This document shows positions 51,263-52,967 of a stretch of 64,000 nt of DNA, piece by piece. Source of the stretch: Octopus sinensis (lineage: Eukaryota); assembly GCF_006345805.1 (NCBI RefSeq), contig NC_043022.1, positions 6,448,001-6,512,000 of the forward strand. Reading direction: 5' to 3'. Made by a program: the position numbers and the translations under genes. Each line of letters opens with the position of its first letter. Positions within the stretch are counted from its first letter, which is position 1. A model generated the notes under the pieces. The model saw only the letters and a list, made by a program, of their open reading frames with translations. It was not told where the DNA came from and searched no databases.

Positions 51263-52092
51263 CCAGCCAAAATAATCCACCTGTTTTATATTAAAACTGG
51301 CATAATCAGGTGTCTCGCATTTACAATCATCTCATTAAAATCTCAAAGCTGCAACAGAAGATACATGATTAATTCAGAACAATGTGGAGAAATAAGGATT
51401 ACATTTGACAGAGAAATCTAAATGCTTCAAGGATCAAATCAGACACATCCAGCCCAAATATTCTGTTTCAGGTTCAAACCAGCCAGAGCTGACCCCTAAC
51501 AATGATCTGAATACTAAAAGGTTAACCTTCTTTTTCTTAAAACACGTCGACAATCGCTGTTGCCAGAATAGTAAAATCTACACCCTAACTACCTCCATAA
51601 ACTCACATGGACTCTTCCTAACCAGAAGATTTTGACTAAGTGCACTGTAACTCACTACAGTTTATATATTTCTTAATATCCCTTAATAGGTACCATAGTG
51701 AGGTACAATCTACTTGTGTCAAAGTACTGCAGTATGTACACAGACACAGGCGTTAGGAAGGGCATCCAGCTGTAGAAACTCTGCCAGATCTGACTGGGCC
51801 TGATGAAGCCTTCTGGCTTCACAGACCCCAGTTGAACCATCCAACCCATGCTAGCATGGAAAGCGGACGCTAAACGATGATGATGATGATGATGATGACA
51901 CACAGAATTATACTTTCAGTGTTGTACTTAGCCATTGAATCTTAAAGGTTTTGATCATAGTTACATCATCACCTGCGATATAAACCAACAACTGTGCAGT
52001 TAGAATGTGTATCTCAGACTGCATTTTGAACCAACAACATTACGTTTGCTGCAGTCTCTCACCTCTTGAGGGAAGTCTTCTGACAACGATGC

Positions 52093-52417
52093 TGGAAGAA
52101 AAACATCTTTTGATGGGGGAAGAATATGAGGAGAATAAGTTAGGTGAAGGGCTCAGACATCTGTTAAACCCAGCACCATCAGATGCTTTGCTAAGGGAGC
52201 CAAAACTGGGAATGTCTGTCTGACTTCCAGAAGAAAATGATGGAAAGTTTGTCTGAACAGAAAGTGGACTCCATGATGACTTCCTGACGGGGAAATTGAT
52301 TAGAGAAGCTGAGCTCTTACTCCTGTGTAGAGGATGTGTTGATGAGGAGAGGGGTTTGCAACGGAGCAATGGTGATGTGGAAAAGGATTTATAGGAACTG
52401 GCAGATGAGTTGGTTGT
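52093..52417 (-). other. Intronic duplicate of part of TMEM201 exon 56416-55842
   Basis: 323/325 identical to 56007-56331, same orientation, offset 3914 bp. Confidence 0.9.
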
Positions 52418-52967
52418 CACACATTGCGGTTGGTCACACATTGCGGCATCCCAATGAAGAACTCATCCGGAAGGCAATAGCACCAGATCCTCCCCCACGT
52501 TGGTGTAAACTGAAGGTGTGGTTCATAACAATCAAAGTGGATATGGAACTCATTTCTGGGCCCTCGAGTCTTTGGCATTTGCCTGGAACCCATCTTCAAT
52601 ATCTTTCAAGACATTAGCCTTTTAGCTTTTAAACTGGCCAGATCCAGCCCAAATATTTTATTTGTTTTATGCTCAAACCGGCCAGATCCAGCTTCACTAC
52701 AATGTCATTCTAAGAATAAAGCAATCATATTGAAATCTCAAAGCTATGAGATAATCCATGATCGATTCAAAACAATGTGAATAAATGAAGATTTCACAGA
52801 GTAATATCTGAATGCTAAAGGGACCAGATCTGGCCCCACTCGTTTCTAACACCTACCATTCCCCGCCCAGCATCTCCCCCATATATTTTCACTCCTCCCT
52901 ACATTAGCTTTTCTGGAACATTCCAGAGAACAGAAAGAAAGAGAGAGAGAAACAAACAAGTACTTAC

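What the first reader, a model, noticed from the sequence alone, without database searches (positions are those of the whole stretch)
52063..52461. Near-identical exon fragment copied into a downstream intron, possibly a nascent in-frame cassette exon
Seen: 52093-52417 equals 56007-56331 except for two substitutions (52145, 52151), both synonymous in the TMEM201 frame. The junction has an 11-bp duplication cacacattgcg (52418-28, 52435-45) around gttggt, which is microhomologous to the insert end, a templated-insertion signature. The frame stays open to a phase-1 donor AG|GTGAGA at 52063, and a weak GAG acceptor at 52461 would give a 399-nt phase 1-1 exon compatible with both neighbours. Exonisation is inference; two synonymous changes are too few to show selection and could be allelic.
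Basis: partly seen in the sequence, partly recalled or inferred. Interest (0 to 1): 0.7.

Follow-up and report, generated by a model that had tools for sequence, protein, structure and literature searches.

The report
Exon fragment pasted into octopus intron
A 325-base piece of a coding exon of the Octopus sinensis TMEM201-like gene was copied into the next-but-one intron as a patch left by repair of a DNA break; it is a young, probably silent repair scar, and nothing found here shows that it has become a new exon.

Summary
Window 52093-52417 equals 56007-56331 (325 bp, two mismatches). The window is Octopus sinensis (GCA_006345805.1), and the gene is TMEM201-like on the minus strand. The source lies wholly inside a 575-nt coding exon, and the copy sits in the intron after the next exon.

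The O. vulgaris orthologue has the empty site. There the flanks form one uninterrupted reading frame of an old retrotransposon (LINE-like) remnant. In O. sinensis, 5-7 bp of that remnant are replaced by the 325-nt copy plus a 10-nt patch copied from the adjacent flank. There is no target-site duplication, no poly(A) and no terminal repeats, and every joint has 2-nt microhomology. This is the signature of a double-strand-break repair insertion: theta-mediated or synthesis-dependent end joining, or a class-2 templated sequence insertion.

Exonisation is not supported:
- The proposed acceptor (52461) is very weak.
- All strong acceptor-like sites shift the frame.
- No annotated isoform contains the segment.
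- Only one of the two substitutions lies in the copy.

An assembly artefact is unlikely, but I could not exclude it without reads. This is a new example of a known kind of event, of modest interest.

The parts
52093..52417 (-). Inserted copy of an exon fragment (325 nt). It encodes the same 108 residues as positions 376-483 of XP_029651383.2.
   Evidence: Absent from the orthologous O. vulgaris site and from O. bimaculoides.
56007..56331 (-). Source segment, wholly inside the 575-nt coding exon 56416-55842 of the TMEM201-like gene.
   Evidence: Conserved as a single copy in O. vulgaris and O. bimaculoides.
52418..52427 (.). A 10-nt locally templated patch (CACACATTGC) between the copy and the right flank. 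Together with the shared GT and GG it forms the first unit of a 14-nt direct repeat (52416-52429).
   Evidence: absent from the O. vulgaris empty site.
52433..52446 (.). Template of the patch: the second unit of the 14-nt direct repeat GTCACACATTGCGG, part of the original flank.
   Evidence: present once in O. vulgaris.
51984..52092 (+). Left half of a degenerate retrotransposon (LINE-like) ORF remnant, antisense to the gene. It ends ...SLLTTML at the insertion point.
52428..52614 (+). Right half of the same ORF remnant (..VGHTLRHPNEELIRKAI..IKVDMELISGP..).
   Evidence: phmmer hits at E 2e-4 to 7e-4 against 1.8 billion proteins; alignment uninterrupted across the O. vulgaris empty site; relatives carry PF00078.
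52613..52830 (+). Repeat tail following the ORF remnant. Other copies of this repeat are in the window.
   Evidence: matches at 47589-48093, 28969-29152, 51324-51487 and 63890-63999.
52968..53075 (-). Exon upstream of the insertion intron (108 nt, ends in phase 1).
50416..50667 (-). Exon downstream of the insertion intron (252 nt).
52057..52065 (-). Donor-like site GAG|gtgaga (last exon base 52063). It lies in the old flank and is present unchanged in O. vulgaris. It is the best-scoring GT of the intron (9.8 bits).
52461..52475 (-).
52091..52105 (-). Acceptor-like site tgtttttcttccag|C formed across the left junction (first exon base 52091). It scores 11.2 bits against 3.4 for the O. vulgaris allele and lies 29 nt upstream of the 52063 donor.

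Best explanation
This is a young repair scar specific to the O. sinensis lineage.

A double-strand break occurred inside an old, antisense retrotransposon remnant in the intron between exons 53075-52968 and 50667-50416 of the TMEM201-like gene. It was closed by microhomology-primed, template-copying end joining (theta-mediated or synthesis-dependent MMEJ).

Inferred sequence of events:
1. The 3' end of the left side (...GATGCTG) annealed by 2 nt (TG) to the long single-stranded overhang of the resected right side. The annealing point was 3.9 kb in, within the coding exon.
2. It copied 325 nt and then fell off.
3. It re-annealed by GT (within an imperfect GTTGGT match) 7 nt from the tip of the same overhang, copied about 12 nt (CACACATTGCGG), and fell off again.
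4. It finally annealed by GG at the tip and was sealed.

Net result: 5-7 bp (TGCAGTG) replaced by 335 bp, with both copied pieces direct repeats of sequence on the same side of the break.

Shown: the copy, the empty site, the joints, the flank identity and the polarity of the substitutions. Inferred: the enzyme, the order of the steps and a DNA rather than RNA template.

The insert is most likely spliced out with the intron and has no function.
For: - Copy and source are 325 bp with 2 mismatches.
- The window is 100% identical to the O. sinensis assembly.
- O. vulgaris has the exact empty site...GATGC TGCAGTG GGTTGGTCACACATTGCGG.... It reads as one open frame that aligns without interruption to retroelement ORF tails (...LQWVGHTLRHP... 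against ...LRWFGHVLRWP...; E 7e-19 and 3e-18). The empty state is therefore ancestral.
- Relatives of those proteins carry reverse transcriptase PF00078.
- O. bimaculoides lacks both the remnant and the copy.
- There is no flanking duplication, poly(A) or terminal inverted repeat. Both units of the 14-nt repeat lie on one side of the insert.
- Microhomologies TG, GT and GG are read directly at the joints.
- Short insertions identical to flanking DNA, produced by aborted synthesis on the opposite resected end, are the described hallmark of theta-mediated end joining (PMC7165422).
- Inserts of 73-414 bp with microdeletion and microhomology and without TSD or poly(A) define class-2 templated sequence insertions (PMC5110952).
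- The copy keeps the ancestral base at 52151 where the source has changed, so it is not a verbatim re-use of the assembled source.
- Age: one derived change in 325 nt against about 2.3% intron divergence from O. vulgaris and a 2.5-My split (bioRxiv 10.1101/2023.05.16.540928) suggests well under 2.5 My.
Against: - Everything rests on a single assembly. No independent reads or contigs could be found.
- A 325-nt synthesis tract is far longer than the primary tracts reported for theta-mediated insertions, which are rarely over 10 bp, with totals of 3-30 bp (PMC7165422).
- The first priming step rests on only 2 nt.
- The model needs about 4 kb of resection.
- Because the copied piece lies within one exon, a DNA template cannot be told from the gene's own RNA. 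Replication-based template switching (MMBIR) would leave the same joints.
- The two differences could be the other haplotype of a heterozygous source.
Confidence: 0.75

Rival explanations
1. RNA-templated patch (class-2 templated sequence insertion). The broken end was extended by reverse transcription of the gene's own mRNA or nascent pre-mRNA, by Pol theta or a retroelement RT, and then joined by end joining.
For: - The donor is a transcribed exon of the very gene that was broken, so its RNA is close by in cis.
- The size (325 nt) lies within the 73-414 bp range of experimental TSIs, which were enriched for transcribed sequence and reduced by RT inhibitors (PMC5110952).
- Pol theta can reverse transcribe RNA and support RNA-templated repair (PMC8195485).
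- The orientation is compatible (my inference from the joints).
Against: - The copy crosses no exon-exon junction, so nothing shows an RNA origin.
- There are no A-to-G differences of the kind expected from an edited octopus transcript. The only change in the copy is G-to-A on the sense strand.
- The donor's closeness, and the fact that both templated pieces lie on the same side of the break, are explained more simply by a resected DNA end.
Confidence: 0.15
2. Nascent exon. The copy is already spliced into some transcripts, either as the reader's in-frame 399-nt cassette, or as a frame-shifting 'poison' exon that uses the stronger acceptor-like sites with the 52063 donor.
For: - The frame is open from 52461 to 52063 and phase 1-1.
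- The 52063 donor is the best GT in the intron (9.8 bits).
- The insertion raised the acceptor-like site at 52091 from 3.4 to 11.2 bits and brought in exon-derived sequence with sites of 6-8.6 bits.
Against: - The in-frame acceptor scores -3.5 bits.
- Every strong acceptor gives a premature stop.
- A 29-nt exon is very short.
- No annotated O. sinensis isoform contains the segment.
- There is no conservation, since the sister species lacks it, and one neutral-looking change gives no evidence of selection.
- The weight matrix is generic and not trained on octopus.
Confidence: 0.06
3. Assembly or polishing artefact. The segment was wrongly placed in the intron during assembly of GCA_006345805.1.
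For: - There is only one assembly. L002 is the same record as the window.
- The assembly contains N gaps nearby.
- The two differences could be haplotype variants of the source.
Against: - Both flanks are contiguous with the O. vulgaris intron to the base.
- The joints show a microdeletion, a 10-nt flank-templated patch and microhomologies. That is a biological repair signature, not what collapse, mis-join or chimeric reads produce.
- The region is not a tandem or high-copy repeat.
Confidence: 0.07

Closest known systems
Class-2 templated sequence insertions / TSIPs (Onozawa and Aplan; PMC5110952)
   Same: The donor is left intact. The insert is a few hundred bp. There is no target-site duplication, poly(A) or polyadenylation signal. 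The joints show microdeletion and microhomology. The donor is a transcribed sequence, and the event is germline-heritable.
   Different: The donor is 3.9 kb away in the same gene rather than in a distant region. A second, 10-nt patch copied from the flank is nested at one joint. An RNA intermediate is not shown.
Locally templated insertions (TINS) of polymerase theta-mediated end joining / synthesis-dependent MMEJ (PMC7165422)
   Same: The 10-14-nt direct repeat of the adjacent flank, the 2-nt microhomologies and the small deletion match the pattern of aborted synthesis on the opposite resected end followed by re-annealing.
   Different: The main tract is 325 nt and its template is 3.9 kb from the break. 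Described TINS are 3-30 bp and are templated within tens of bp.
Replication-based template switching (FoSTeS / MMBIR); this comparison rests on my own knowledge
   Same: Serial template switches primed by 2-6 nt microhomology. Templates lie within kilobases in cis. Copying is in direct orientation.
   Different: Those events usually produce larger copy-number changes or complex rearrangements. Nothing here indicates a replication fork rather than a two-ended break.
LINE-mediated retrocopies / class-1 TSIPs / processed pseudogenes
   Same: A piece of a gene's exon is copied to a new place, and it sits next to LINE-like sequence.
   Different: There is no TSD, poly(A) or T-rich target. The LINE-like remnant is older and was continuous before the event (O. 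vulgaris), so it was the target, not the vehicle.
Exonisation, pseudoexon activation and exon duplication as sources of cassette exons; this comparison rests on my own knowledge
   Same: Intronic sequence with an open, phase-compatible frame, a strong donor and newly created acceptor-like sites. It duplicates coding sequence of the same gene.
   Different: It is not a tandem whole-exon duplication with its own splice sites. The in-frame acceptor is poor. There is no transcript evidence and no conservation.

Membership tests
Class-2 templated sequence insertion (DSB-repair patch) | The insert is a copy of a sequence elsewhere in the genome, and the donor is intact | tested here: met
   source exon intact and coding.
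Class-2 templated sequence insertion (DSB-repair patch) | No target-site duplication flanking the insert | tested here: met
   Comparison with the O. vulgaris empty site: 5-7 bp lost, nothing duplicated on both sides.
Class-2 templated sequence insertion (DSB-repair patch) | No poly(A) tract or polyadenylation signal at the insert end | tested here: met
   Sequence at 52093-52110 and 52400-52430.
Class-2 templated sequence insertion (DSB-repair patch) | End-joining marks at the joints: microdeletion, microhomology | tested here: met
   TGCAGTG lost; TG, GT and GG shared at the three joints.
Class-2 templated sequence insertion (DSB-repair patch) | Donor in a distant genomic region; RNA intermediate | tested here: inconclusive
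   The donor is only 3.9 kb away in cis. The copy lies within one exon, so RNA and DNA templates cannot be distinguished.
Polymerase theta-mediated end joining with templated insertion | Inserted bases identical to flanking DNA close to the break (3-30 bp) | tested here: met
   A 10-nt patch (14 nt with shared bases) copied from 7 nt away. The feature is as described in PMC7165422.
Polymerase theta-mediated end joining with templated insertion | Dependence on Pol theta | not testable with these tools
   Needs genetics or biochemistry.
LINE-mediated retrocopy (class-1 TSIP, processed pseudogene) | TSD of at least 5 bp, poly(A) tail, T-rich target | tested here: not met
DNA transposon / MITE / Helitron gene capture | Terminal repeats or element ends bounding the captured piece, with a TSD | tested here: not met
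   Only the 325 nt plus 10 nt are new relative to O. vulgaris. For contrast, a real TTAA-flanked MITE insertion in the same gene is described.
Cassette exon | Usable 3' splice site | tested here: not met
   The site at 52461 scores -3.5 bits against 7.1-10.7 for the real acceptors (generic matrix).
Cassette exon | Usable 5' splice site and frame-preserving length | tested here: met
   GAG|gtgaga at 9.8 bits; 399 nt, open frame.
Cassette exon | Presence in transcripts | tested here: not met
   The annotated isoforms X1-X3 (719, 697 and 618 aa) lack it. RNA-seq reads could not be examined.
TMEM201 / Samp1 / Ima1 family (the host gene) | Ima1 N-terminal domain PF09779 in the full protein; C-terminal transmembrane segment | tested here: met
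   P0004, P0001 and P0002 carry PF09779. The window model equals P0004 residues 201-719. The domain itself is encoded outside the window.

The most novel reading that the evidence does not exclude
The repair-templated exon fragment is already being tried out by the splicing machinery in O. sinensis. One form would be the in-frame 399-nt cassette, which gives the inner-nuclear-membrane protein a second copy of a 108-residue serine-rich segment. The other would be a frame-shifting poison exon that uses the acceptor created at the insertion joint. Either would be a dated (under 2.5 My) snapshot of exon birth by break repair, possibly templated by the gene's own transcript.
Probability: 0.07. Interest if true: 0.65.

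Novelty: new member of a known kind. Interest (0 to 1): 0.3.

Why it matters
It is a clean natural example of a few-hundred-base templated repair insertion in an animal germ line. It has a base-exact empty site in a sister species that split about 2.5 My ago.

Both copied pieces come from the same side of the break. That suggests the long resected opposite end can serve as template kilobases from its tip, which is testable genome-wide by comparing O. sinensis with O. vulgaris.

It also shows how break repair can place exon-derived sequence, and create strong splice-like sites, inside an intron. That is raw material for new or poison exons, though nothing here shows it is used.

Tried and rejected
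- Chimeric LINE retrocopy formed by RT template switching. I first suspected this because the flanks read like a LINE ORF2 tail. Rejected: O. vulgaris has that ORF remnant continuous across the site, so the remnant predates the insert.
- Transposon capture. Rejected: nothing but the copy and the 10-nt patch is new, and there are no TIRs or TSD.
- A second, similar-looking 317-bp intragenic copy in O. vulgaris. It proved to be a piggyBac-like MITE with a TTAA duplication and perfect terminal repeats. That is a different mechanism.
- Deletion in O. vulgaris of an ancestral insert. Rejected: the O. vulgaris state preserves the conserved LxWxGH motif of the retroelement ORF.
- Protein search with the source exon alone found nothing. 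This was a false negative of the word index on serine-rich sequence, because the spliced model found the orthologues.
- Pfam on single exons and on the flank ORFs found nothing.
- Four exact look-ups of ORFs spanning the copy or its joints found no independent contig.
- L003 could not be read in scripts, so O. bimaculoides was handled with the DNA search, get_sequence and DNA alignment.

Full report
**What is in the sequence.** Window 52093-52417 and 56007-56331 are direct copies of 325 bp. They differ only at 52145/56059 (T/C) and 52151/56065 (G/A), and identity ends abruptly on both sides. No further copy exists in the window or in the wider locus. The short repeat next to the copy is real. 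Counted fully, it is a 14-nt direct repeat GTCACACATTGCGG at 52416-29 and 52433-46, separated by TTG.

**Where the window comes from and what the gene is.** I built a minus-strand exon model from open frames and canonical splice sites. The exons are A 62385-62141, B 59201-59007, C 56416-55842, D 53075-52968, E 50667-50416 and F 48647-48463, and they join into one frame ending at a stop.
- Searching the model found Octopus vulgaris (98%), O. bimaculoides (90%) and Argonauta hians (38%) TMEM201-like proteins, all carrying the Ima1 N-terminal domain PF09779.
- The O. vulgaris cluster also holds the O. sinensis isoforms X1 and X3; isoform X2 sits in the O. bimaculoides cluster.
- The model equals residues 201-719 of isoform X1, XP_029651383.2, exactly.
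- The O. sinensis assembly GCA_006345805.1 (CM016884.1) is 100% identical to the window over 18.5 kb.

The source segment lies wholly within the 575-nt exon C and encodes residues 376-483, a serine-rich, poorly conserved stretch. The copy lies in intron D-E, one exon further downstream, in the same orientation.

**The empty site.** The O. vulgaris orthologue (L001, GCA_951406725.2) aligns at about 97.7% on both sides of the copy but has the exon segment only once, in its exon. On the window's + strand the three sequences read as follows:
- O. vulgaris: ...CTGACAACGATGC TGCAGTG GGTTGGTCACACATTGCGGCATCCC...
- O. sinensis: ...CTGACAACGATGC [TGGAAG...325 nt...GAGTTGGTTGT][CACACATTGC] GGTTGGTCACACATTGCGGCATCCC...
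- Source: bounded by ...ATCCGT|TGGAAG and GTTGGTTGT|ATGGTA.

Five to seven bases (TGCAGTG; the first TG may be retained) were therefore replaced by 335 bases. These are the exon copy plus ten bases that repeat the flank lying 7 nt further on. Nothing is duplicated on both sides of the insert. There is no poly(A) and there are no terminal repeats. The three joints share TG, GT (within an imperfect GTTGGT match) and GG.

O. bimaculoides has a short (about 785-bp) intron D-E with neither the surrounding repeat nor the copy, and it has the exon segment once.

**What the flanks are.** On the + strand, antisense to the gene, the flanks read as the tail of a retroelement ORF.
- The right flank alone finds ...RRLRWFGHVLR...W..VK.DME..SGP... 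proteins at E 2e-4 to 7e-4 in a library of 1.8 billion.
- The uninterrupted O. vulgaris frame (...SLLTTMLQWVGHTLRHPHEELIRKAI...IKVDMELISGP...) aligns straight across the insertion point to two of them, at E 7e-19 and 3e-18 pairwise.
- Relatives of these proteins carry reverse transcriptase PF00078 upstream of this tail.

The empty state is therefore ancestral. The retroelement remnant was the target of the event, not its vehicle. Calling it LINE-like rests on my knowledge of the LxWxGHVxR tail motif. The link to reverse transcriptase is shown.

**Polarity and age.** With O. bimaculoides as outgroup, the five variable sites resolve as follows:
- Three are O. vulgaris-specific.
- The 56065/52151 difference is a change in the source exon; the copy keeps the ancestral base.
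- The 56059/52145 difference is a change in the copy.

Both are synonymous third-position changes, but only one belongs to the copy, so nothing can be said about selection. One change in 325 nt can be set against about 2.3% intron divergence between the two species, which are reported to have split about 2.5 My ago (bioRxiv 10.1101/2023.05.16.540928). This suggests an age of well under that figure, with very wide error (inference).

**Mechanism.** The joints match break repair by microhomology-primed copying.
- Short insertions identical to flanking DNA, made when synthesis on the opposite resected end aborts and the end re-anneals, are the described scar of polymerase theta-mediated end joining (PMC7165422).
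- Inserts of 73-414 bp with microdeletion and microhomology, and without TSD or poly(A), define class-2 templated sequence insertions (PMC5110952).

Both copied pieces here are direct repeats of sequence on the same, higher-coordinate side of the break. One model covers everything. The left end primed three times on the long 3' overhang of the resected right end: first 3.9 kb in (TG, 325 nt copied), then 7 nt in (GT, about 12 nt copied), then at the tip (GG).

This model is inferred, and it has weaknesses. The 325-nt tract is far longer than typical theta tracts. The model needs about 4 kb of resection. An RNA template (the gene's own transcript; PMC5110952, PMC8195485) or replication-based switching would leave the same joints. 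The copy crosses no splice junction and shows no A-to-G editing-type difference, so an RNA origin is neither shown nor excluded.

**Exonisation.** The arithmetic is right: 52461-52063 is 399 nt, phase 1-1 and open. I scored sites with a generic metazoan weight matrix, written from established consensus frequencies and not trained on octopus:

| Site | Score (bits) | Note |
|---|---|---|
| The gene's real acceptors | 7.1-10.7 | |
| The gene's real donors | 6.8-12.6 | |
| Proposed acceptor 52461 | -3.5 | rank 102 of 136 AGs in the intron |
| Donor 52063 | 9.8 | rank 1 of 149 GTs; already present in O. vulgaris |
| Acceptor-like 52322, inside the copy | 8.3 | frame-shifting with donor 52063 |
| Acceptor-like 52252, inside the copy | 8.6 | frame-shifting with donor 52063 |
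| Acceptor-like 52283, inside the copy | 6.8 | frame-shifting with donor 52063 |
| Acceptor-like 52091, across the left joint | 11.2 | 3.4 in the O. vulgaris allele |
| Alternative in-frame acceptor 52185 | 2.8 | the only other in-frame option |

- Paired with donor 52063, each of the four strong acceptor-like sites shifts the frame and meets a stop within 7-72 codons.
- The annotated isoforms (719, 697 and 618 aa) do not contain the segment.
- The frame staying open over 24 flanking codons with a donor in phase is about a 1-in-10 chance event (inference).

The in-frame cassette is therefore possible but unsupported. If the region is spliced at all, a frame-shifting pseudoexon is at least as likely.

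**Artefact?** Only one assembly carries the insert, and I found no independent contigs. However, two base-exact flanks, a microdeletion and a flank-templated patch are a biological repair signature rather than an assembler error. The copy also differs from the assembled source at a site where it keeps the ancestral base. I rate an artefact at under 10%.

**Verdict.** The templated-insertion reading is supported and sharpened. The nascent-exon reading is not supported. This is a new instance of a known kind of event, of modest interest.

Noticed in passing
window 61772-62088 (minus orientation); L001 14264-14563 and 25632-25947; empty site at window 49776-49779: A piggyBac-like MITE of about 309 bp (TTAA|CCCCTTACCCGG...GGGTAAGGGG|TTAA, perfect terminal inverted repeats) sits in the intron after exon A in both species. 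O. vulgaris has a second, 98.4% identical copy at a TTAA in the last intron that is empty in O. sinensis. This implies recent mobility.
   Followed up: yes
window 49032-49148 and 58524-58640: A 117-nt inverted repeat, 99% complementary, formed by two copies of a common SINE-like repeat. The copies lie in the introns flanking exons C, D and E. This arrangement could favour back-splicing (circular RNA).
   Followed up: no
window 52091 (junction) and 52063: The insertion joint turns a weak AG (3.4 bits in O. vulgaris) into a strong acceptor-like site (tgtttttcttccag|C, 11.2 bits). It lies 29 nt upstream of the intron's best donor-like site. Together they form a candidate 29-nt frame-shifting pseudoexon.
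   Followed up: partly
window 56404 and 56416: Two acceptor AGs lie 12 nt apart at the start of exon C. Both keep the frame. The annotated proteins use 56416 (..DYSDSFASQ..).
   Followed up: partly
L003 10626-11410 compared with window 50668-52967: Intron D-E is about 785 bp in O. bimaculoides but 2300 bp in O. sinensis. The difference is repeat insertions (the retroelement remnant and SINE-like copies) in the vulgaris/sinensis lineage.
   Followed up: partly
window 1155-2156; about 13900-14080; 22500-25100 (-); 40200-43600 (+): A 1-kb trinucleotide-repeat block that reads as His/Pro/Gly/Thr runs in all frames. A run of N (an assembly gap). Two reverse-transcriptase-bearing retroelement remnants.
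   Followed up: no
one search compared: The word-indexed protein search missed a 100% identical 187-aa match when queried with the serine-rich exon alone. It found the match when conserved exons were added, so negatives from that tool on low-complexity queries are unreliable.
   Followed up: yes
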